DNA of 63,513 nucleotides, counting the filler, from Platydemus manokwari (Eukaryota), in NCBI GenBank assembly GCA_037951405.1. It is 5 parts of 5 records of this genome, joined end to end, with 100 filler letters (N's around TTAATTAATTAA, not from the genome) between each part and the next. Parts side by side here need not be neighbours in the genome. Positions count along the whole stretch, not along the records: positions 50,090 to 63,513 come from JBBMOY011734731.1; 4 more parts are not named here. One strand, given 5' to 3'. This document shows positions 50,090-63,513 of this stretch, one piece after another. How positions within the stretch are numbered: position 1 is the stretch's first letter; every line of letters begins with the position of its first letter. Under the pieces are notes generated by a model. The model was given only the letters and a program-made list of their open reading frames with translations. It made no database searches and was not told where the DNA came from. The position numbers were made by a program, and so were the translations under genes.

Positions 50090-50184
50090 TATTTTGATTG
50101 AATTTCATTAAATAAATATTTTAAAAAATGTTTTTGTTTTTTAAAAAAAAGCCGGAATCATACTAACACACCTAATAATTTTAG

Positions 50185-51077
50185 ATGAAACGAATAGCCA
50201 AATAGAGATACCCGAACTTCCTTTGAATGCAGTAGATGAGGTCATATTGCACAAATCCCTTTCCTGTGATACTATAAATATTCAAGGACATGTTAAATAT
50301 TAATTTTGTGTTAATTTTGGACATTTGGCAAGAACATGCCTCTCAAATCGAAATAAATTTCAACAACCGATTTTCAAAAAAAAAGTTAATTTTCAGGATT
50401 CTTAAAATAGAGTAAGCTAAATTTCAAGAAAATAAAAAGAAATGGGAAATAGAATTATCGGTAATACGAGATAAAGTAAATCGTTGGATTGACAAACTCG
50501 TAATATATGAACTTCAAAACCTTATGATACATCTAATTTGCACATTACAAGAATTTTAGAAATATAATGTAAACCTTTCAAAGAAGAAGTCGAAAAAGGA
50601 AAATACTAGAAAATTAATTTGATGACTGTATAACCATTTTTGAGGAGAGCACGCCACAAGATTGAATTATTATAAACGATAGCAGTAAATTTTCGATTTG
50701 AAACGCTGCGAAAAGTGAATTATGTACAGTGGTATCATTTCAGATTTGGAGAAGTTATGCTGGGGATTTAGGCTTTTGGTAAGTTGTGACAAATATTTTA
50801 GATGCGGTAAAAAATGTAATGAAAAAGTTTTTATAGATTTTCTAGGAAAGTTTGTTAAATTGAAATTGTACTTATTTTCGAAATCTATTTATATATAAGT
50901 CATTTAGAAAACGCTCCATGATGACGATTATTTAATGAAATATTGGCCAGAAATGGATATTATGGTAAAAATTGAAAATATTTTTTTGGAAAAAGAGAAT
51001 CCTTTGACTACATTTTATTTTTATTAAAACAGGCATTATCAGAGGATCCAATTGATTTCAGAAAAAATATTATATAG
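50185..51077 (+). CDS. 3'-terminal small exons of an unknown gene (50185-50240, 50908-50964, 51033-51077), possibly the end of the 47776 gene
   Basis: Spliced reading ETNSQIEIPELPLNAVDE|KTLHDDDYLMKYWPEMDIM|ALSEDPIDFRKNII* with GT-AG junctions in phase. Confidence 0.55.
50283..50720 (+). pseudogene. decayed LTR-retrotransposon gag zinc knuckle and possible protease remnant (intronic)
   Basis: VKY*FCVNFGHLARTC is a mutated Cx2Cx4Hx4C knuckle; many stops follow. Confidence 0.5.
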
Positions 51078-51675
51078 TCGGAGAAAATAAGAGATAATAG
51101 ACTGTTTAAAAATTGGGATTTAATAACATAGTTGGCGTCGTATATACGTAATACCTGTTTTATATTATTATATTTTTTGTAATCACCGTGTTCATGTCAG
51201 TGTAACTATTGCTGATAATATTTCAATAGTAGGATTCATTTTTAACATTGTTTCGTTTTAACTTTTTAATAATTTTTACTTGATTAATAAAATAATTTCA
51301 TTATTTTAAAATGATATATTATATAGAGTCAAAAGCATTTTCAATTTGATTTTTCTTAATTTTGAATTTTACCATATTTTTCTAATTTTTCGTAATGCAT
51401 TTTTATTTCTCAAGGCTGTTTCACATTTAACAATTTATAAGTACTATAATGTTATTAATTGATAATTAATGATAATATTTTATTACTAATTCAAATTGAT
51501 ACTAAAGTTAGACTTCCGCGTGTAATTGAAAAACATTAGGATTTATTATTCAAGGAGGAGTGAAAAATAATCGAAATAAGCTCATTTTATATTCACAGAT
51601 TTAATTTTATTTAAAAAACATCAATGCTATATCATGGTTGTAGTTATAAAACAATATAATTATATTAATTTAAAA

Positions 51676-54600
51676 ATGAATTGTTTAAAATCACGTAGAT
51701 TTGTTTTATTATTCAATGTTTCATATATTTTATTTTTGAATAATTATAAAAATAAATTTTTGTAAATATTCTAAGAAACTATGAAAAACTATGACGCTAA
51801 TGTCACAGCAGACAATTTTAATGAATCAATAAATAGTTTAATATTTCCTCTGGCAACTTCAACGGGTATAAAAGATAAAACTAAAAAGTATAAATTCTGT
51901 CAAAAATTATTAACTTAATGAATTGTTTCTTAGAAATGATAATCGTTCCGAATTACAAGGTACTAGGATAAGATAATTTTTCATTATTAGTTATTAGATT
52001 CAGTGTGTTATTACAATGATATGCAGAATCATTCAAAATTATTGGTGGATAACAATAATTATTTAACGGTTCATTGAAAATCGCTTTTATTATTTTTTTT
52101 AAAAACATTCTAGATTAATAATGAAATAGACATGAAATATTTGCAACAAATAGAAAATAATCCCCCAAAAAACAATCGAATACAAACATTTTTAGATAAT
52201 GTAATTTCAACAATTAATAAATTCCAAAAAATAATTTTGATTTTTTCATATAAATTATAGTTTGAAAATTCGTTTAATATCGAAAATCGATATGATACCG
52301 TCGAAAAGAAGAAGGGAAAAGAGTACCTATTGGATAATCGAACATTGTTAGGTTGGGATTCAAAATCGAATTGTGAATTTGAGGCCGAATCAAAAGATGA
52401 AGAATATTTCTTGAAGAACACCCACATGATATCGTGCTTAACCATTGGTTCTGAACCATTTAATAAAACTGAAACGACAGCAAATATTGAGCAGTTCAAT
52501 AGAAATGATAAGGAAAATAAGTTGGAGAATACCAAAGAGGAATCTTTTGGAGATCTTGAATTAATGATGTTAAATGTTGAGAAAGGTAAATCATCTCAGG
52601 TGGATATTGAGGAAATCAATCATTTCATCAACGAGAGGAGTTTATCTAATCAATGTGACGTCACCAAATTGGCATATGGTAAATGATTATTATTTATGGG
52701 AGATTTTCCCCTTTCTGTTATCAATAACATCCGATATCATTGTGGACAGATTTCAATTGCTGCATTGATAAACCAGAACAACTGATGTCCAATCGTCAAA
52801 ATCTTCTCCAAACACCCACAAATATCGTCGGAAAATCTGACAAAGTGGTCTCGAGAAAAATCGATAACAAAATCAAATCCTTTCAGAACATCCAATTGTT
52901 ATCCACGAAAACGCATCTTTTATGGATTGGCGTGGCTGTGAGGAACAACGAGTAGGTTTTATATTTGATTATTTCTCTCGCACATTTGTTGCTATGACAA
53001 CTGATAAATAATTTATTATATCGATTGATCAAATATGGTATTGTGGCTTTTATCTTATCGATTATTTATATTTGAATGATTTACTATTTGATATTGCTGC
53101 GATACACTTGATAATATATTGTATTATTCGATATTATATGGTATTGGATCGATATTGCTGTGATACATTTGATTATATATTGTATTATTCGATATTATAT
53201 GGTATTGGATCGATATTGCTGTGATACACTTGATTATATATTGTATTATTCGATATTATATGGTATTGGATCGATATTGCTGCGATACACTTGATTATAT
53301 ATTGTATTATTCGATATTATATGGTATTGGATTGATATTGCTGTGATACATTTGATTATATATTGTATTATTCGATATTATATGGTATTGGATCGGTATT
53401 GTTGCGATACAATTGGTAATGTATTGCCAATATTTAATCATTAAAAGTTGAATTATAATATATATTGGCTCAATGTAATGATTTTTAATATTGATATCAT
53501 ACGGTATTGTTTGAATATTGTTGTTATGGTAACAGAACCAAACAAAAACGCCAAGTCATTCTCGATTGGTTGCATTCCAATAAAATGTAAGATCGGTGTT
53601 CATTTTGTTCTGTGTTTGTTATTTAATTTTATTAATTGAAAATTGTGCTATTTGGGTATCGATCGCGATATATTTCTTAACAATACCAACAATATTCTGT
53701 ATTGATTAGTGTGTCAATACATGAATGGTATAGCCGATATTTAATGATATATTGATATATCTTAGCATCAAATCATTCAAATTGAACCTCAGTGCTCCTG
53801 GACAAATGGTAGCCAAGTTAACAATTGTTCAATCATCAAATGTATTCCATGTAAATAATATCTTATATGTATTGATGATTGAATGATTTGTGTGTGTCTG
53901 TGTGTATTGCAGTTCAGTAATCAATCTGGAAATGATTTTCATCAAACCAAAGATGTTATTCTCGAACCCAAATATGATAAAAAGCTTTATATTGTCTTCA
54001 ATCCTGTCGATTCGGCATATCATAATGGGCTGATTCTTGTTCAAGTTGGATCTCGGAAATTCAAAGTGAGTCAAATCGATATCATTTAATAATTGGTTTG
54101 TCAACCCTAACCTCATATCAAGCCGTTATCACCCCATATCGAACTCATCCACCTCATATCGATCTCACATCAACCTCATATTCAGCTCATATCACCCCAT
54201 ATCGAACTCACATCAACCTCATATTCAGCTCATATCACCCCATGTCGACCTCATATCAACCCCATCCCGACATCACATCACCCCCACATCTCATTAACAT
54301 TAACATTTCCATTCACAGGTCCATTTATTCGGATATGCCGAACCAGCTAAAATGCAACTTGTTGATTTCATCACAGCTCCAGATCCCAAGAATCCCGGCA
54401 AAGAGATTTTCGTCAAAGATTGCTCGATCAGTGATAAATCTCAACTGAAAATCAGTATTTTCAATTCTGGTGCTCGTACTGGATATGTGGGATTCTTCTC
54501 GTACCAGCAATCTGTCAGATTTCAACCGCGATCATTTCTGCTTATCCCGAAAACCACCATGGACGTTCAAGTGAGCACCATCAATTGCAATGAGCCGATC

Positions 54601-56105
54601 ACGTTTTTCGTGATTCATGCTGATGAGGAATTGCGTCGAGCATGTAGGATCAGGTATGGATATGGAATCGGTTGCTATGGTGATGATATGTGTGAGGGTG
54701 TTTCAGTGCTTCCAAATTTGGCCACAGCGACGTCTACAATGTGTTCAATGTGCTCCAAATATTCTCCTGTTTGCCAGAAGAGAAGCTCATGAAACAACGT
54801 AAGGAAAGATTTCATTTTGTCAGCTCTTATAACGCTCTCGCCTTCTCTCTATCGTTAACAGATGAACTGCCAGAATATGATTGGCGGCCTCATCTCAGCC
54901 GACAAATCAATACATCATATTGCCCTGCCATAATCAATATCTCGCCCATCAGACCGCCTCAACCGTTGACGATGTCTCGCTTATGTCCAACCTCCTGCAA
55001 TGATTCTGTGTGCACAATCGATAAACAGACGAAATCATCTGTCACTGGGCTCAGCTCATTGTCGAACATTGAGGTGATATCTCGCTAATCGATTAATCGA
55101 TATCTCTCTCCATTAATATCGCTCATTGTAGAATCTCAACACCAAAACCATCTACATGAACAGTGCTGCTAGTTTTGTCCACTCGCTCAGTCACACACTC
55201 AGCTGTGTCGTCATCATGAAGGATGTCAACAGTTTCCCGCCGACCTGTCTCAACAAGATCTCATGTGAGTTTTGATTTATCGATTTTTCCAGATTTCTCG
55301 CTTGACGAACAACTCGCCTCAATTGATAATCGATTATTTTGTGTCAGATCTCGGCATTCTCATTCGGAACAATAACTGTTTCCCTGTCAACTGGTTCATC
55401 AGCAACATGCTGCTCACATCACTCAATTCCATCAATTCCTCATCCAGTTGTCGTGACCGCCAGAATTCCGCCTCACCGACCGACTCCAACAGCATCTATT
55501 CACTGACAAGCGTTCCCATTTACAATCCCGCCGACAACATGAGTGTTCTCGTCGAAAACGGCATCCTCAAACCGTTCGATGCAATCGTAATTCCTGTCAA
55601 ATTCCAGCCACTCAATACAGGCCGTGTCGATTGCAAGTGCAACGTGAAGGTTTACACGGATTCCGATGATTTGTTCTTCGAGAAAGATCTCGATTTCAGT
55701 GGTGAAGGTGTGAAACAGGTTTGATATTGTTGCCATGACAACGTCCAATGTCAATGCAGTTTTCTAATCGTTCAGGAGGCATTGCGAAACGATAACTGCA
55801 AAATTCCCGGCTTGTCCGTTGCTGGTCACGTGATCGAATTCCGGAACTGCGTCACTGGCGGTCCAAAAGTCGAGCAGAAACTCGAGGTCAAGAACAAAAC
55901 CAATCACATGAAAGATATTTTTATAAGTCATCTCAATGATAAACGATTCGAAATTCGAGCAACGAAAATCTCGCTCGATAAAGGACGGAGCTTGATTCCA
56001 GTGTTCTTCAATCCGAAATCGAAAGGAATCTTCGAAGACTTTTTGGTGCTTAGCGATGACGAAGGCAACTGTACGAGTGTGGCGTTGCGAGCCGAAGTGA
56101 AATGA
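51676..56105 (+). CDS. CEP192: CEP192/Spd-2 homologue, compact (881 aa, 15 exons: 51676-51694, 51776-51887, 51934-51959, 51998-52068, 52114-52200, 52261-52678, 52750-52951, 53766-53850, 53913-54065, 54319-54653, 54707-54798, 54862-55073, 55132-55264, 55348-55718, 55776-56105)
   Basis: The exons total 2646 nt and splice without stops. Motifs occur in CEP192 order (human recalled from memory): LLSTKTHLLWIGV ~ ILSNKQFLAWGGV; KFKVHLFGYA ~ KFTIPLSGYG; IFNSGARTGYVGF ~ VRNTGSRAAFVKAVGF; HADEELRRACR ~ GGDEISRQQYR; IPVFFNPKSKGIFEDFLVLSDDEGNCTSVALRAE ~ MPVQFKPKSAGKFEALLVIQTDEGKSIAIRLIGE. N-terminal FPLATSTGIKD ~ LPVAVSTLARD. Confidence 0.85.
53090..53411. repeat. 61-bp tandem minisatellite, about 5.3 copies, in CEP192 intron 7
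   Basis: Unit GATATTGCTGyGATACAyTTGATTATATATTGTATTATTCGATATTATATGGTATTGGATC; head-to-tail with no spacers. Confidence 0.95.
54105..54292. repeat. C/A-rich minisatellite, about 11 bp unit (CCTCATATCAA-like), in CEP192 intron 9
   Basis: Repeated CTCATATC/CTCACATC cores with a duplicated block of about 43 bp. Confidence 0.8.
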
Positions 56106-56444
56106 TGTGATCGATTTCATTAAATGTGTATATTGTATTCGTTTCTTCATTTATTGATCAATAAAACAAATGTATCGATTTGATTGGAATAACTGTGTGT
56201 GTGTGTGTTTGTGAGTGTGTTGATGAGATTCATTTTAGATTGGTCGGTTTGATGAGATTATTATTGATGAATATTGGGTTACAATAAATATATTGGTGAA
56301 TATTCTGTTATCAATTCTTTATGTTACAGACACGTTGAATTAGTACAGCTTGTGTGTATGTGGACGCCTTATATATGATTGGATGCATTTAAGTTTTTAG
56401 TATCATACGATATCAAAAACTGAAAGCACAATAACTTTAAACAT

Positions 56445-57042
56445 TGCTGAAAATATCTCCACAATTAAAGATCGATTGTCTGATAAACGCTCCCACTGAA
56501 CCTCGAATATATTGTTGGGCATATCTCAAATTAGTCAAAAGTGTCCCAAGAACCAAGGAAAACCCAAAAGGGTCAATACACACAAACCCGATAAGCACAC
56601 GTGCTGCCAACCAATCAGATTCGTTCTTATGTTAATCCATATGCCTACAAAATGCAGCAAGCTCAAATATCCGTCAATGATATAAGAGATATAAGGAAAA
56701 TCTCAAGTAAATCAATCCATAAACAAATTTAGCGAATTGGAAATGATGGTCCGTGACACTAAGCAGACACACCCGATAGGTCTATAAAAGATGCTGAATT
56801 CCATAGATTCTTGCCAGTCTTTTTTGGTCGGTAACTTTTGTGCTTAGCTCATGTGTGATTTCAGCAATCAGTCTTTTTGATTACTCTTCATTCTTTGTTT
56901 GACATTCGGGCGCTGAACCCATGTTGAGTGATTTTCTTTGTGAATTGCGTAAAGAATTGTTATTGTTTTTATTGAGATTTCGAGCGTATTATTTTAGTTA
57001 ATATAGCTTTGTAGATTCAAATTGTTGTTTGATAACGCAACA
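56445..57042 (+). mobile_element. solo LTR, family A (about 600 bp)
   Basis: TG...CA termini, near-TSD ACAT/ATAT (4 bp, 1 mismatch), internal CCAATCAG and CTATAAAAG promoter-like boxes, and an inverted copy at 35106-35650. Confidence 0.8.
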
Positions 57043-58455
57043 ATATTATTGTCATATAATTGTCATAATTGTCATGTGAATATTCGTACATGTCCATGTA
57101 AATTGCATTTGTCATTGAGCTGTGTCATTTATGTAGAAGAAACAGTCCAGACAACATTACACTTTCGATTTGATTTATTTTTCTATAAAGCGATACAATC
57201 ACTGTTATCGCTCATATGTTTTGTTATTTTCTCTTCATTAAAACATGGTTTTATCATGTCATTTTTATCACTTTCGATGTATTTTATGAAACGTATAGGA
57301 AATTTATTAATTTCGAAAACTATTTCTATAGCAACCGGATAAAATTTCTGTTGAATATGTGATAAAATAAAGCTTGATGGAGTAACATGTATATTATTGT
57401 TTATAAAATAATATTTAGAATTAATAATTATCACAATGTTGGTGTGCTATAGAAAAAAATATTTTTAAAACATCTCAACAGCGACTGTAGCACATCAAAT
57501 AGTTTTAGTTTTGTATTTTAGATTTTTTAAAACACTTCGAGATTTATTTTAGAATCAAATTTTAATTATGTGTGTTCCTTTTATTTTTGATAATCGGTAT
57601 TTACGATTTTCATTTATTCTTACTGTATTGTATTGATTAAAATATTCCCTTTTGTTTATATCTTTTATTTATAATCACATTCTACTCCAAATAGATCAAT
57701 GATTCGCATAAGTTGTTCAAAATTGTGAATTAAACTATGTTGGATTTTATTGCTATATTTATTTCACAAACCGAAACTTCAATTGTTTGCCCACCGTTCC
57801 GTCCGCTTTTGAATTTGTCAACTTCTTGCTGTGGCGACGTGCTGACTATTGAACTTAAAAAACTTTTTTGTTATTACTTTGGCTATTGTTAATTTTTATT
57901 TTTCTAAATATATCAATTCATGAATCACATCTTGAATTGAGTTTTGTAACAGTATAATACAATTGTGACAAAGAATATTATACATTTACCACACTCTAGA
58001 CAACCTTAATTACTGATTCAGTTTGTCTTAAGGTTAATTTCTTCATTAAATTTAGAAACTAATCAGCAAACTCGGTTTTTTCATTATAATTAAATTAATT
58101 CAGTTAGGGCGATATTCGCTTTAACTATGCCTTTAAATATTTTTACTAAATCTACCTATAGCGTGGTGTTCATACCCGTTATCGACGCCCCTTGTGAATC
58201 AGAAACCAGTTAAAACAGAAGCAATGGTTTAAAGCTCGTCAACGGTTAACCAAATCCGTAACAGTAAATAAAACCAAAAAACAACAACATAACTTTTATA
58301 TAAAACTTTTGTGTGGTTAGTGCTTTAAATCTTTTGAATTGTGAATCGGTAAGCCTAAACAGAGTCGACACATTCTAAATGATACACAAACGATAAACAA
58401 TAATTAAAGCAATTGAGATCAAATAACGAAGGTAATAATAAAATATAATTATCTA

Positions 58456-58456
<1 letters not shown>

Positions 58457-58524
<68 letters not shown>
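58457..58524. repeat. (AAT)n microsatellite, about 22 units
   Basis: Directly visible. Confidence 0.95.
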
Positions 58525-58527
<3 letters not shown>

Positions 58528-60648
58528 TCTTAATGGTGATGCGAGAAAAATAAAATGTTATTTGATTTACAAAAATAGAAGCTTATATTGTAAAAAATTA
58601 ATTTCTAACATTTCGCTTAGATATCTATGTCAGAATTGTTCTTCCCATATCAATTATATATTATGGTGCTTAATTTAATTTCATTTTTATGAATGCTGCT
58701 TCCTCCTTCTCGGTCTCAATCACAAATTCCCAATTCAAGTGCTCTGTGTTTTGAACCAGAACTATTGATACGTTTCCGATTTTGCATGAACACCCTTAAT
58801 TTTATTTTTCGAAAATTTTATTCGTCAGTTCATAGGTTCTTGGTGAATGCAAATCATTTGAAATATAATTAACATCATGTTGTATTACAATTTAATCTAT
58901 TCTATTTACTAGCTAATATTCTTCTTTTGGAATTGCATTAATAATCGGGCTTCTAGATGAATCGTGTAATTATCATTATAATTATTATATTTAGCATCAT
59001 ATAATATTTAACATATTCATATTTTTTGACACTAGGTCACATTTTATTACATTTATTTTTTCAAAAAAAATTTTAAAATAAATTATTATGACTATTACAG
59101 TTTTATTTGCGTTTATATACGTCAAAATAGCGTTTAATAAGTTATCAGTAATTTCAAATTTGGATCCATAACCACCATAAATTTTATCACCTGATCTGTA
59201 GCCAATAATTCTGTATTAAAATTTTTTAATTTGAAAATCCTTGTTATTTAATTGATTTTTATTCCTCGAGTTGGTCTAATAAATGATATTATAAATTCTT
59301 TATTATTTTGGTTAAATATCTAATTGATAGATCCCGGTTATACATCATTTTCTAAAATATATTTTATTAATTCAATATCATTAGATTTAATGGCATTATT
59401 TATATTTCTTGTTTATTTTCAACAGCTTTAAAATTTTCCTTTCCTTCTTTTATTATTAATTGTTGGTTTTCCTGATTTTTGAACAACTGGTTTTAATAAA
59501 AGTGAAGAAAATACAGCTGTAACTTTTTGGGGACACTGCTTTTATTTCTTTAATGATTATTATTTCACTTTGATCGAGATCTACGTCTTTATCAGTACTC
59601 TGAGTCCGCCTCGACCCTCGGCTAGTTATATGACCTATGTTTTTCTTGGTTTTTGAAACACTGGTTTTAATAATGCTATAGAAAATACAGCGATACCTTG
59701 ATTTAATAAAATCTTTGAATATTGTTTTTCTTCAGCCTCGGTATTTAATTTATTTTTTAAAGCAATAATTTTTCTCCATTCCTCATTTCTTTTATTGATC
59801 TCAAAATCATTCATACCAATTTCTTAAACTGAAAATTGATATTAATTCACAACACTTTCAAAGGCATCACATTTTTGTATTTTTTTGTTTTTTCACATGT
59901 CTCGAGTGGGATTAAAGGGCGTTAAAATTTTTTTAATTTCAGGTTGTGACGTTAATCACGGAACTCTCCTACTAATTACTTTAGAAGGTTAGAGGAAATT
60001 AAACTATATTGAAATGTCAATTTTATACTCGATTTATAAAGTTATCAATTATAAACTAAGTGTTCAAAATGTTGTAATGGTAAATGAAACACTTGAATTT
60101 ATATCACGACTAATAATATCGTCACCGAGATAAATACAAATTAACATACAACACTACTCTGATATGGATTAGTCAATGTTTTCAAGTCTAGACCAAATCG
60201 TAACATTCAATAATAAAATATCCATTGAAAAATCGCAACAGAAAAAGTAACAATATCAAAATGTTCTGATTCCAATAATCAACGAACTACCGATTATACA
60301 GAATGCTGTCAAATATCAAAACTGTGACGAGATGACATAAAAATCGATAAATAGTATGCTGTTATCAATATCATTATTAACTCGATATTGATGTTAACTA
60401 AAAATCGATCATGATGCTTGAAACATGAGGCAACCAATGATATTGAGAGAATAAAATGATGAATCATTATGTGAAACTTGGTGAATATGATAATGAAACC
60501 GAAAGCTAGAAATCGATATCGTGTCTATATTTTATGGAAACGCAGTTGTACACAGAAAAATATTCTTAAAAGTCTATCAATTCAAGCCGTGTGCTAGGCG
60601 AGCACACAAACTAATCAATAAAATCTATAATCGATCACGATTGATTTG

Positions 60649-63451
60649 CTAGGCGAGAATATATTTGTCGTGGAAGGATTTCAAGAGGTTCTCCAGATAG
60701 AATGCCTGATTTTTGAGTTTCCTAGAATTCGAAACGATGTCCTCCAGCTTCTTGGTGTCAGATTCGAACTTGGCAACGTCGGTCCTGAGCTTGTTCATGT
60801 AACTGTCGACGACGCCATTCAATCGTTTCATTGTCGTGTTGAGGGCCATCTGGGGCTGAAGCAAATTGATTAAATCTCGTCACGACACTGCCAGCAACAA
60901 TAAATACAGTTGCCATGGGTTACCTGTTCAGCACTGTGCTTGCTCGTCATGGCCATCACCAATTCCAATTTCTCGGACACATAAGACCTGAATTGAGATT
61001 TAAACGCCTTCTCTTTGGCTCTCGTCGTCCAGGTCGAGTATTCATAGGCGTACATGATGCCATAAATGCTGGCACACACGCCTAACACTTTCCAGCCGGT
61101 GGCCTTCAATACCAGACCGCCACACAGTACCGTGGCGAGCACGGATCGGCCAGTAATATTGGGCAATATTTGTCGGAAAGCGAATATCGATAAGAAGCTC
61201 GAGGTGTCCATCGAGACATTCATGGCATTTCTCGAAGGTGCAATCGGGCCAATAAGTTTGCCGAGTAACGCTGTCGGACCCAAGCTAAATCGAAATGAGA
61301 GATCCTCTCGAAAATCTGACGAGATGTTGTTGCAATCGATGTAGAATTTCGGAGCGTATTCGTCGCACACAGATAAGCGCATCTGTTCTGTGACATCCTT
61401 ATCGGGAATGAGAGCCATATACCGCTCTACAATCAGTAAGATGGCATGAAATGGTGCCGTAACCAATGGCAACACTCACTGACAATATTGCAGCTCACAG
61501 CATCCACTTGATTGCACATATCTCGGGCACAAATCGAAGTCAAATTGTTTCCCAATTGCCTCTCGACGTGCTGACTCAACTCGACTTTATACTTGAATAG
61601 CAGGCCAGCCTCCTCATAAAACGTGTGGTCAAACTCGTCAATAACATCGCCCAATCGCCTCAATTCTTCTCGCAACACATCAGCAACTTTCTCGGCAACC
61701 TTTTCCGACAACCTGACGATCTCAGCAACACTCTCTTTGTGAGCGACTTTTCTCATCGTGTCGAGTTTCTCGCTCCTTGCTCGCATCTTATGAGTTAACG
61801 TGATAGCAGCATCTCTAATCATAACGACCAAATCATTATCGCAACTGTGAGCACCATTTTTACTTTTGTTCCTGAGCTTTGTCGTTCAAGCTTTCGACAA
61901 TCAGTCTGACATCGCTGACGATTTCTTGACCTTGAATTGAGTGGGCGGCAAATTTCGTCTTGGTGGCAGACTCCGATAGAGTTTTCTGATTAATTACTCA
62001 AATATTATTGATTATAAACAATAATAATAATATATAATCATTTAATATTCTGAAAATATCGCCACTCGCTCCACGTCTCGTCAAATCAATAATTGACGAA
62101 TAAATCGTCTCAAACATACCTCTAGATTCTTCTCGAAATTCTTAAACTCAAACAATCGACTTTGCCATCCTTCTCGCAAGCGAACAACACCAGGCGAATC
62201 TGCCAAACTACCTGATTCGCCGGAACCATCATTTTGTTTGCTTCTATTATGCAGAGCTTCGCTGGCAGATACAAAGAAAACCCGGCTTTCGGCTTCACTT
62301 TTCGAACAGACCTTCAATTCTTTGGTCAAAAAGTTCACACAACGTTCCATATGCTGAGCTTTCGCCTAATAAAATCAATATCAATGATGGTACATGACAG
62401 GATTGACAAGCCATTTACTTCTGTCACATATTCAACTTGTTCAGCACTGGCATCCCAGCGATTATTAAGAATAAAAATATTTGGTTTCGACAATTTATCT
62501 CGGACTTTGTGAAAGAAAGCCTTCTCCTACAGAAAAATGTTTATCAATTCTCAAACCCACTCCTATGCGGAAAAATATGATGCTCACTGTGTGATTCAAT
62601 GTAGCCTCACTATTAGCAACCAGTATAAACACATCAGCATCTAAGCAGTACATATCAATCCATTTATCAATATCTGGATCGACATCAATGCCCGGACTAT
62701 CGAGTATAACAACATCTTCTGATAGCAATGGACATTTTTCACATGGCCAATAAACTTTTATCAAGGAATCCGTTGATAATTTATTCGAACAAACATCTCG
62801 GGCGAGTTTATTCACCGAATCGATTGGTTTAAACTAGTTAGTTGAAAATAGAGTCAAAAAATATTTGTAGGAAATATCAATATTTAACATCAACTTCCGA
62901 CAAATCGTCACTGTCATCTTTGGGTGATGAAATAGACATACAACCCTGGCTATCTGTAGTTCCACGAATTTCAAGAAAACAACTCGTTGTATGTCCAATA
63001 CCAGCGGGTAAAATTTTACCGCCAAGCATGGCATTAATAGTTGTACTTTTACCATTGGATGTTCTATTAATTAATTTTAAGAAATAAAAATCTATTTTTA
63101 TATCAACACCTTCCAAAAAATGCGCATTTCATATTATCTCGATTGATTACAATTTGAATTCCCTTAACTTTTTCAACAAAATTATCCAGTAATTTAACAT
63201 TTTCAACATTAATAAGTGTCTGAAACATTGAATCTAGAATGAAGTTTGCTAATTAAATTCCGTTAGAATGAAATTACGTTACCAGAATTATATATATCCT
63301 GAAAAAATGTATTACTATCTTTCACATAATCAGAAATGTCGCCAAATATTTTCGATATTTCCTTTTTGCTTTCTTTAAATATATTTAGTTGTGAAAAACT
63401 GTTTTCTCTATTCATTTGTAAATTATTTGTATTATATTTAATACCAGACAT
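60649..63451 (-). CDS. MFN: mitofusin (Marf/Fzo-type transmembrane GTPase), complete, 744 aa; exons 63451-63283, 63233-63110, 63063-62889, 62833-62588, 62526-62419, 62365-62120, 61985-61864, 61814-61480, 61426-60924, 60855-60649
   Basis: G1 [30 protein letters not shown]3 [22 protein letters not shown]4 [34 protein letters not shown] region followed by [17 protein letters not shown]. Exons total 2235 nt in frame. Confidence 0.97.
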
Positions 63452-63513
63452 AGGTTATCAGAATGTATGAAAATTTGAATATTAAAACAAGAACGAAAAG
63501 ATAACCGGAATCA

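What the first reader, a model, noticed from the sequence alone, without database searches (positions are those of the whole stretch)
51676..56105. Intact, miniaturised CEP192/Spd-2 gene in what looks like a flatworm/planarian genome
Seen: 15 small exons splice into one 881-aa ORF with the Spd-2-domain signatures, the terminal ASH domain and an N-terminal PLATST motif. The ORF track only shows this as unrelated fragments. Established: CEP192/SPD-2 is the Plk1/Aurora-A scaffold of the mitotic centrosome, vertebrate CEP192 is far longer, and SPD-2/Cep192 was reported missing from the centrosome-less planarian Schmidtea mediterranea (Azimzadeh et al. 2012). Inference: if this host is a triclad, the gene was overlooked because it is divergent and exon-fragmented. 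It may then act at basal bodies, in sperm or in acentrosomal spindles. PLATST may be the Polo-box docking site. The host is not proven.
Basis: partly seen in the sequence, partly recalled or inferred. Interest (0 to 1): 0.85.

Follow-up and report, generated by a model that had tools for sequence, protein, structure and literature searches.

The report
Short CEP192/Spd-2 centrosome scaffold gene
The stretch holds an intact, many-exon gene for a short, fast-evolving member of the CEP192/Spd-2 centrosome-scaffold family, but the host animal is not identified, and divergent CEP192 genes were already reported in planarians in 2017, so it is an ordinary new family member.

Summary
The gene is real. 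I rebuilt it as 13 exons on the + strand (51781-56105) with 12 canonical GT-AG introns and no internal stop, giving 842 aa.

The protein has about 260 residues with no recognised domain, then four ASH/PapD-like domains. The first two carry the residues that define the Spd-2 domain: LFGYAE (motif 1), NSGARTGYV, and ADEELRRACR (motif 2). Their order and spacing match the solved domains. An AlphaFold model of exon 8 gives a beta-sandwich followed by a helix on motif 2. Its best Foldseek matches in the PDB are the bee and human CEP192 Spd-2-domain crystals. The last exon's best Pfam family is Cep192_D8, though below cut-off.

A 50%-identical orthologue fragment exists in one other public run. No RNA data exist.

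The host is not identified. It is not a well-sampled species, and one weak lead points to flatworms. The novelty claim fails in any case. Martín-Durán et al. (Genome Res 2017) already reported, cloned and stained putative hidden CEP192 orthologues in Schmidtea and Girardia. Verdict: new member of a known kind, low interest.

The parts
51781..51865 (+). Exon 1 (tentative). ATG at 51781 is the first in-frame ATG after a stop. Ends with 1 base of a split codon; donor GTATAA.
   Evidence: No homology or RNA support. An alternative upstream mini-exon 51676-51694 is possible.
51847..51864 (+). PLATST (aa 23-28), a candidate Polo-box docking motif (S-T core).
   Evidence: Read from the sequence. It is the only match in the protein to the extended Polo-box consensus as I recall it. 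0.14% of shuffles have such a match in the first 60 aa. Binding is inferred.
51934..51959 (+). Exon 2 (tentative, 26 nt).
   Evidence: AG/GT sites present and frame kept. No other support.
52114..52200 (+). Exon 3 (tentative).
52261..52678 (+). Exon 4: N/E/K-rich region with no Pfam match, probably disordered (139 codons open in 27%-GC DNA).
52750..52951 (+). Exon 5: end of the domain-free N-terminal region and first strands of the first ASH domain (..LLWIGVAVRNN).
   Evidence: The join to exon 6 gives a typical ASH strand pattern.
53766..53850 (+). Exon 6: first ASH domain, continued.
53913..54065 (+). Exon 7: first ASH domain. Weak Pfam Cep192_D4 match at 16.2 bits, against a cut-off of 35.5.
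54319..54653 (+). Exon 8: last strand of the first ASH domain carrying motif 1, most of the second ASH domain, and the start of the bridge helix carrying motif 2.
   Evidence: AlphaFold model with pLDDT 70.6 shows a beta-sandwich plus a helix at residues 103-109. Foldseek top hits are 9FH8 and 7PTB. Pfam Cep192_D5 at 16.8 bits.
54325..54342 (+). Spd-2-domain motif 1, LFGYAE (family consensus LXGYGG).
54463..54489 (+). NSGARTGYV, the counterpart of human RNTGSRAAFV, which holds N1917.
   Evidence: N, G and R are invariant in alignment A2.
54619..54648 (+). Spd-2-domain motif 2 and bridge helix, ADEELRRACR (consensus GDEXXR). D, E, R at +4 and R at +8 match human D1989, E1990, R1993 and R1997.
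54707..54798 (+). Exon 9: rest of the bridge region.
   Evidence: No independent support.
54862..55073 (+). Exon 10: end of the second ASH domain and a linker.
   Evidence: No Pfam match.
55132..55264 (+). Exon 11: start of the third ASH domain.
55348..55718 (+). Exon 12: third ASH domain.
   Evidence: 52% identical to P0001. The acceptor place and phase are conserved in L001. Best Pfam match is Ig-CFAP74_2 at 17.7 bits.
55776..56105 (+). Exon 13: terminal ASH domain and the stop codon (56103-56105).
   Evidence: Pfam Cep192_D8 at 30.8 bits, E 3.5e-7, model positions 7-99 of 101. 50% identical to P0001. The orthologue's domain folds as PapD-like.
56160..56165 (+). AATAAA, a likely polyadenylation signal 55 nt after the stop.
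   Evidence: Read from the sequence. Its role is inferred.

Best explanation
This is an intact protein-coding gene for a Spd-2/CEP192-family protein of about 840-880 aa.

Shown:
- 13 exons with canonical splice sites and an open frame.
- About 260 residues that are N/E/K-rich and have no recognised domain.
- Four ASH/PapD-like domains after that.
- In the first two ASH domains, the residues that hold the two halves of the Spd-2 domain together in the human and honeybee crystals.

Inferred mechanism, by analogy with characterised family members: the protein sits at centrioles and acts as the upstream scaffold of the pericentriolar material. A phosphorylated S-T site in the N-terminus docks the Polo-box domain of Polo/Plk1; the candidate here is PLATST at aa 23-28, like human T44. 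The Spd-2 domain then drives scaffold assembly or self-association.

Whether it does this at centrosomes, basal bodies or acentrosomal spindle poles depends on the host, which is not identified.
For: Gene model. DNA confirmed letter for letter by contigs of a public run.

Family-defining residues are taken from PMC11922060: motif 1 LXGYGG, motif 2 GDEXXR, N1917, R1993 and R1997.
- The model has L.GY at aa 355, N.G.R at aa 401, and DE..R at aa 454 with a second R at +8. Each core pattern occurs exactly once in the protein.
- All three in this order and spacing arose in 1 of 100,000 composition-matched shuffles.
- None of about 18 bacterial or other ASH-repeat proteins fetched here has motif 2. 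All four proteins with Cep192 architecture (P0014, P0015, P0019, P0020) have GDEI.R.
- A profile of those four has human CEP192 Spd-2 domain 7PTB as its best PDB hit, aligned over the same three motifs.

Structure: the exon 8 model (pLDDT 70.6) is a beta-sandwich followed by a helix that starts at DEELRRA. This is what the paper describes for helix alpha-1 emerging from strand f. Foldseek against 350,542 PDB chains ranks 9FH8 (Apis Spd-2 domain) at 1, 2, 4-6, 8, 10 and 11, and 7PTB (human) at 7. TMq is 0.49-0.56, against 0.41 for the best other family.

Last exon: Cep192_D8 is the best Pfam family and the match reaches the C-terminus.

Orthologue: fragment P0001 in another species is 50-52% identical with no frame break and shares an intron position.

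Polo docking: human CEP192 T44 and S995 are the Plk1-binding sites (PMC13458439). PLATST is one of only three S-[ST] sites in the first 262 aa.
Against: - No Pfam Cep192 model reaches its gathering score on any exon piece: D8 30.8 against 33.5, D5 16.8 against 27, D4 16.2 against 35.5. For exons 7, 8 and 12 another ASH-clan family scores slightly higher (TMEM131L_4, CFAP74_4th, CFAP74_2).
- Single-sequence and small-profile searches of PDB sequences do not find CEP192. The profile of the C-terminal half weakly prefers FAP47 and CFAP74.
- The rigid structural aligner ties all PapD, MSP and ASH folds at Z 7-7.7, and the Spd-2-domain crystals are not among its top 50. The margin of the Foldseek E-value over OCRL ASH is small.
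- My hhalign of the C-terminal 592 aa against the four Cep192-like proteins gave E 4e-5. Bacterial ASH repeats score as well or better against the same profile, so that score is not specific.
- The invariant glycines of motifs 1 and 2 are replaced: GG becomes AE, and G becomes A.
- The AlphaFold alignment for exon 8 contained Cep192-like sequences, which could bias the model.
- There are no transcripts, so expression and the 5' exons, including the one with PLATST, are unproven.
- The full spliced protein could not be handed to Pfam, AlphaFold or the large searches.
Confidence: 0.83

Rival explanations
1. One reading: the host is a triclad planarian, a lineage reported to lack SPD-2/Cep192, and this is an overlooked, divergent orthologue that works at basal bodies, in sperm or at acentrosomal spindles.
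For: - The genome is AT-rich with roughly 60-nt introns.
- The nearest ESM-Atlas cluster by language-model features for the last exon scores 0.95, and its few labelled members are mostly Platyhelminthes.
- Azimzadeh 2012, as cited in PMC4446793 and PMC4799839, reported the gene missing from Schmidtea and Schistosoma.
Against: - The host is not identified by any test.
- Only one public run holds the DNA, so it is not a model planarian.
- The last exon found no triclad protein among 1.84 billion cluster representatives of about 15 billion proteins. It found only one relative, from one 2025 run, whose exons are very GC-rich.
- The Atlas lead is weak and is not an alignment.
- Putative CEP192 orthologues in S. 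mediterranea and G. tigrina were published, cloned and stained in 2017. Even if the host were a triclad, 'overlooked' would not hold.
Confidence: 0.18
2. It is another ASH-domain protein, for example a short relative or fragment of a ciliary central-apparatus protein such as HYDIN, CFAP47, CFAP65, CFAP74 or DLEC1. On this reading the Spd-2-like motifs are coincidence.
For: - ASH-clan Pfam families cross-hit freely. Bacterial ASH repeats pass Cep192_D3, D4 and D8 cut-offs.
- CFAP74 and TMEM131L models edge out Cep192 models on three exons.
- The PDB profile search prefers FAP47 and CFAP74.
- For the orthologue's last domain the Foldseek top hit is the HYDIN PapD-like domain.
Against: - Those proteins are thousands of residues long with many ASH repeats. 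This gene has four, a stop codon and an AATAAA signal, and about 260 N-terminal residues with no recognised domain.
- The three Spd-2-domain signatures occur once each, in the right order and spacing, with p about 1e-5 in shuffles. The helix is predicted at the right place.
- The Spd-2-domain crystals are the best Foldseek hits for exon 8, ahead of all central-apparatus chains.
- No crystal of CEP192 domain 8 turned up among the PDB matches, so the ranking cannot count against CEP192.
Confidence: 0.08
3. The locus is a decaying or unexpressed copy, or the model is wrong in its 5' third, so the real product lacks the PLATST exon or starts elsewhere.
For: There is no RNA evidence at all. Exons 1-3 are short, AT-rich and without homology. 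Alternative exons fit equally well.
Against: - There are no stops or frame shifts across 2.5 kb of coding sequence, and all 12 introns are canonical.
- The C-terminal 220 aa are conserved at 50% with a distant relative whose base composition is very different.
- Exon 4 is a 141-codon open stretch in 27%-GC DNA.
Confidence: 0.1

Closest known systems
Human CEP192 (Spd-2 domain crystal 7PTB; ASH7 crystal 6FVI)
   Same: - A disordered N-terminus followed by ASH domains.
- Motif 1 Y, N1917, and motif 2 D-E-x-x-R-x-x-x-R are all conserved.
- 7PTB is among the best Foldseek hits for exon 8.
- The last domain matches Pfam Cep192_D8 to the C-terminus.
- An N-terminal S-T site sits near the position of the Plk1-docking T44. 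That the human context is LPVAVST is my recollection, not a tool result.
   Different: - About 840 aa against more than 2,500 aa, and four ASH domains against eight.
- Glycines of both motifs are replaced.
- The loop between N.G.R and motif 2 is about 19 residues shorter.
- Pairwise sequence similarity is undetectable by phmmer.
- No recognisable Aurora-A-binding segment was looked for or found.
Apis dorsata CEP192 Spd-2 domain (9FH8) and Drosophila Spd-2 (1146 aa, ASH3 crystal 9C72)
   Same: 9FH8 chains are the top Foldseek matches for the exon 8 model (E 3.7e-4, 18-20% identity). Invertebrate family members are short and have fewer ASH domains.
   Different: Sequence identity is very low. 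The fly protein has three ASH domains and this one appears to have four.
Putative 'hidden' CEP192 orthologues of Schmidtea mediterranea and Girardia tigrina (Martín-Durán et al. 2017, PMC5495077)
   Same: They are fast-evolving CEP192-like genes that ordinary BLAST misses, in animals reported to lack the gene.
   Different: Whether the window's host is related to them is unknown.
Unnamed Cep192-architecture proteins P0014, P0015, P0019 and P0020 (Logan assemblies, organisms unknown)
   Same: They share the N.G.R.G[FY][IV].F and DE..R motifs. The N-to-D spacing is about 53 residues, the same as here. The C-terminal ASH domains align.
   Different: Only 16-24% identity over exon 8. They have A-Y-[KR]-G instead of G-Y at motif 1. 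hhalign scores against them are no better than for bacterial ASH repeats.

Membership tests
Spd-2/CEP192 | [quoted passage not shown] | tested here: inconclusive
   LFGYAE at aa 355 keeps L, G and the key Y, but the two trailing glycines are A-E. It aligns with human IPLSGYGG by eye, through the profile alignment.
Spd-2/CEP192 | Motif 2 (GDEXXR) at the start of the bridge helix after strand f of the second ASH domain, with the second Arg four residues on | tested here: met
   ADEELRRACR at aa 453-462 keeps D, E, R at +4 and R at +8; G is replaced by A. AlphaFold puts a helix on residues 103-109 of exon 8, directly after the last strand. The motif is absent from all ASH decoys fetched and present in all four Cep192-like proteins.
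Spd-2/CEP192 | Conserved Asn of the inter-domain interface (human N1917) within N-x-G-x-R | tested here: met
   NSGAR at aa 401-405. N, G and R are invariant in alignment A2 and align with human RNTGSR. N-x-G alone is common in ASH domains.
Spd-2/CEP192 | Two ASH domains held in the 'extended cradle' fold | not testable with these tools
Only exon 8 was folded. Its best Foldseek hits are 9FH8 and 7PTB, but VIA-align ties all PapD-like folds.
Spd-2/CEP192 | Pfam Cep192_D4, D5 or D8 above the gathering score | tested here: not met
   On single-exon pieces: D8 30.8 against 33.5, D5 16.8 against 27, D4 16.2 against 35.5. D4 and D5 are cut by introns, so the whole-protein score is unknown.
Spd-2/CEP192 | Long disordered N-terminal region carrying Polo/Plk1 docking S-S/T sites | tested here: inconclusive
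   aa 1-262 have no Pfam match and are N/E/K-rich. There are three S-[ST] sites, one of them (PLATST, aa 23-28) in a favourable context. Binding was not tested and the exon is unverified.
Spd-2/CEP192 | Reciprocal best match to CEP192 in a whole-database search | tested here: inconclusive
   The last exon against 1.84 billion representatives gave one orthologue fragment first, then bacterial ASH-repeat proteins, then two Cep192-architecture proteins. No named metazoan CEP192 was reached.
Spd-2/CEP192 | Localisation to centrioles or pericentriolar material, and a requirement for centrosome maturation | not testable with these tools
   Needs experiments in the unidentified host.
Ciliary ASH-repeat proteins (HYDIN, CFAP47, CFAP65, CFAP74, DLEC1) | Very long proteins with many tandem ASH/Ig-like repeats and family-specific Pfam domains above cut-off | tested here: not met
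   The protein is 842 aa with four ASH domains and a stop codon. CFAP74 models reach only 17.7-19.3 bits, against cut-offs of 27.4-28. The Spd-2-domain motifs are present.

The most novel reading that the evidence does not exclude
The host is an acentrosomal flatworm (a triclad, or a relative within the group that lost centrosomes). This locus would then be a complete genomic copy of the fast-evolving 'hidden' CEP192. It would still keep the Spd-2-domain interface residues and an N-terminal T44-like Polo-docking motif. That would argue that the Polo-scaffolding module of CEP192 survives centrosome loss and works elsewhere, for example at acentrosomal spindle poles or in de novo basal-body assembly.
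Probability: 0.18. Interest if true: 0.5.

Novelty: new member of a known kind. Interest (0 to 1): 0.22.

Why it matters
As it stands, this adds one divergent, short CEP192/Spd-2 sequence from a poorly sampled animal. It shows which Spd-2-domain residues survive extreme divergence: Y of motif 1, N-x-G-x-R, and D-E-x-x-R-x-x-x-R. The glycines do not survive.

It would matter more only if the host proved to belong to the flatworm clade without centrosomes. Even then it would extend the 2017 report of hidden CEP192 orthologues in planarians rather than overturn it.

Tried and rejected
- **RNA evidence.** Both run searches found one DNA run and no RNA run. Read laying on it confirmed the DNA only. 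It also showed one odd contig joint, 51622 to 56138, with only 21 letters on one side, which I take as a repeat artefact.
- **Host identity.**
  - The mitofusin exon found a single 79%-identical fragment, from the same run as the CEP192 relative.
  - The Atlas search on mitofusin gave only generic clusters.
  - Rfam and tRNA scans were empty.
  - Exact-product look-ups of two window ORFs were not on record.
  - Two metagenome scans found no relative.
  - A paper search for the relative's run accession found nothing.
- **Homologue collection.** The search with exon 8 found nothing. The search with P0014 gave only two more unnamed Cep192-like proteins and no metazoan ones.
- **PDB sequence searches.**
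  - phmmer with exons 8 and 13 found no CEP192 hit.
  - A profile of the C-terminal half gave weak FAP47 and CFAP74 hits.
- **Local profile tests.** An HMM of four Cep192-like Spd-2 domains against the model scored 6.9 bits, at the right place but within the range of shuffles. hhalign of the C-terminal 592 aa gave E 4e-5, but I reject it as specific evidence because bacterial ASH repeats score as well or better.
- **Fold searches.** VIA-align and the Atlas shape searches returned generic PapD/MSP/Ig folds only.
- **Pfam on short pieces** around motif 2 and exons 5, 6 and 9 found nothing.
- **Papers.** The 2015 paper on Plk1 docking (PMC4524112) is not held, and the 2017 supplements are not held.
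- Whole-protein Pfam, AlphaFold and database searches were therefore left out.


Full report
**What is in the sequence**

The piece (50090-63513) is AT-rich. Intergenic GC is 22-30% and rises to about 45% over coding exons. The mechanical ORF list shows only fragments between 51.7 and 56.1 kb on the + strand.

I joined open segments at GT..AG sites from the three-frame translation. This gave a 13-exon model, 51781-56105, that reads through without a stop for 842 codons. All 12 introns are canonical. Ten are 53-83 nt. The 814-nt and 253-nt introns hold tandem repeats. Exon GC is 40% against 30% in introns.

An upstream mini-exon (51676-51694) and one more short exon at 51991-52044 or 51991-52068 are compatible with the frame. 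Exons 1-3 have no support beyond splice sites and frame.

Contigs of the only public run that holds this DNA cover 51500-56186 with no differing letter. That run may be the source sample. No RNA run exists, so no junction is confirmed by transcripts.

**A relative**

I searched the last exon against 1.84 billion cluster representatives. This found one close relative, P0001 (220 aa, 50% identity), and otherwise ASH-repeat proteins.

P0001 lies on a 970-nt genomic contig of run SRR33002330. There the exon is 57-75% GC and its flanks are 23-31% GC.

The contig has an acceptor at the same codon and phase as the window's exon 12. It lacks the window's last intron: the open frame runs straight across the equivalent of the 55718/55776 junction. 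That supports these two boundaries and shows the C-terminal 220 residues are conserved without frame breaks.

A mitofusin fragment from the same run is 79% identical to the neighbouring gene. The relative is therefore a different and fairly distant species.

**Is it CEP192/Spd-2?**

Pfam on single exons gives the following:

| Exon | Best Cep192 model | Bits | Cut-off |
|---|---|---|---|
| 13 | Cep192_D8 (E 3.5e-7, model 7-99 of 101, ending at the C-terminus) | 30.8 | 33.5 |
| 8 | Cep192_D5 | 16.8 | 27 |
| 7 | Cep192_D4 | 16.2 | 35.5 |

The order is right, but every score is below cut-off. On exons 7, 8 and 12 other ASH-clan families score slightly higher. The clan is promiscuous: bacterial ASH repeats pass several Cep192 cut-offs. 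Domain names alone therefore decide nothing.

The discriminating evidence is the Spd-2 domain. Hu et al. 2025 (PMC11922060) define it by two ASH domains held together through four features:
- motif 1 (LXGYGG);
- motif 2 (GDEXXR), on a helix that emerges from strand f of the second domain;
- a second Arg four residues after the motif 2 Arg;
- a conserved Asn (N1917).

The model has LFGYAE at aa 355, NSGARTGYV at aa 401 and ADEELRRACR at aa 453. Each core pattern (L.GY, N.G.R, DE..R) occurs once. All three in this order and spacing arose in 1 of 100,000 shuffles.

None of the ASH-repeat decoys fetched has motif 2. All four proteins with Cep192 architecture have GDEI.R, and the same 53-residue N-to-D spacing as here. 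A profile of those four has human CEP192 7PTB as its best PDB hit, aligned over exactly these motifs.

An AlphaFold model of exon 8 (pLDDT 70.6) is a beta-sandwich followed by a helix on DEELRRA. Foldseek against the PDB ranks the Apis (9FH8) and human (7PTB) Spd-2-domain crystals first. Only OCRL ASH (rank 3) and one Chlamydomonas central-apparatus chain (rank 9) fall among the top eleven, and all mouse central-apparatus, MSP and PapD chains come below.

**Limits of that evidence**

- The Foldseek margin is small in E-value.
- VIA-align ties all PapD-like folds at Z 7-7.7.
- The AlphaFold alignment for exon 8 contained Cep192-like rows.
- phmmer finds no CEP192 in the PDB.
- A small profile of the C-terminal half weakly prefers FAP47 and CFAP74.
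- For the orthologue's last domain the top fold match is HYDIN's PapD-like domain. No crystal of CEP192 domain 8 turned up among the PDB matches.
- My hhalign of the C-terminal 592 aa against the Cep192-like proteins looked good at E 4e-5. A control showed bacterial ASH repeats score as well or better, so I do not count it.

Taking everything together, I put the CEP192/Spd-2 assignment at about 0.83.

**The PLATST motif**

Human CEP192 binds Plk1 through T44 and S995 (PMC13458439). In the model PLATST sits at aa 23-28. It is one of only three S-[ST] sites in the first 262 residues. It is also the only match to the extended Polo-box-binding consensus as I recall it from Elia et al. 2003. A match in the first 60 residues occurs in 0.14% of shuffles.

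By my recollection the human context is LPVAVS-T44-L, which would resemble FPLATS-T. I could not verify this with a tool, because PMC4524112 is not held. The idea is reasonable, but it rests on an unverified exon and an untested interaction.

**Host and novelty**

The host could not be identified.
- It is a metazoan-type genome. The neighbouring gene is a clear mitofusin (Fzo_mitofusin, E 6.9e-28).
- Only one run holds this DNA, so it is not a model planarian.
- The sole pointer to flatworms is an Atlas cluster (score 0.95) whose few labelled members are mostly Platyhelminthes. This is a lead, not a test.

This is correct for Azimzadeh 2012 and Egger 2015. However, Martín-Durán et al. then reported putative hidden CEP192 orthologues in S. 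mediterranea, found via G. tigrina. They cloned them and described their expression.

The size is ordinary for invertebrates. Drosophila Spd-2 is 1146 aa with three ASH domains, and family members with two to eight ASH domains are described.

**Verdict**

It is a new member of a known kind. The high-interest interpretation is unproven on the host and already anticipated in the literature.

Noticed in passing
window 60649-63451, minus strand: A multi-exon mitofusin gene lies tail-to-tail with the CEP192-like gene, about 4.5 kb away. The 201-aa exon hits Pfam Fzo_mitofusin at E 6.9e-28. A 79%-identical fragment (P0018, L002) comes from the same run as the CEP192 relative. I did not build a full model.
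   Followed up: partly
window 53090-53426 (intron 5): A tandem array of a 61-bp unit, 5.5 copies with 94% matches, sits inside the 814-nt intron. It creates spurious repeated ORFs in the ORF list.
   Followed up: no
window 54109-54290 (intron 7): A C-rich, degenerate tandem repeat with 11, 22 and 43-bp periods (CCCCATATCGAACTCACATCA-like) fills most of the 253-nt intron and gives a strong negative GC skew.
   Followed up: no
window 58433-58525: A (TAA)n microsatellite of 32 copies lies in the gene-free 4.5 kb between the two genes. No Rfam or tRNA hit was found anywhere in the piece.
   Followed up: no
L001 1-970 and L002: The related species has very GC-rich exons (up to 75% GC per 100 nt) next to 23-31% GC flanks. 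The window's exons are only 40-47% GC, so base composition differs strongly between the two relatives. L001's flanks carry the 17-mer TTGTTACTAAAAATAGA twice exactly, plus near copies. It is absent from L002 and has no convincing match in the window.
   Followed up: partly
window 51781-52951 versus 54319-56105: Within the gene the 5' exons are much more AT-rich (windows at 21-33% GC) than the 3' exons (about 44%), so there is a composition gradient along one gene.
   Followed up: no
proteins P0014, P0015, P0019, P0020 (Logan assemblies): These are unnamed proteins of 900-1300 aa with full Cep192 architecture and an invariant GDEI.R motif, but A-Y-[KR]-G at motif 1. They come from unidentified organisms, and their S/N-rich linkers suggest AT-rich protists. 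Their best PDB hit is human CEP192 7PTB.
   Followed up: partly
window 51622 / 56138: One Logan contig of run X1 joins 51622 to 56138, skipping the whole gene, with only 21 letters on the shorter side. I take it as an AT-rich repeat artefact rather than a deletion allele.
   Followed up: no
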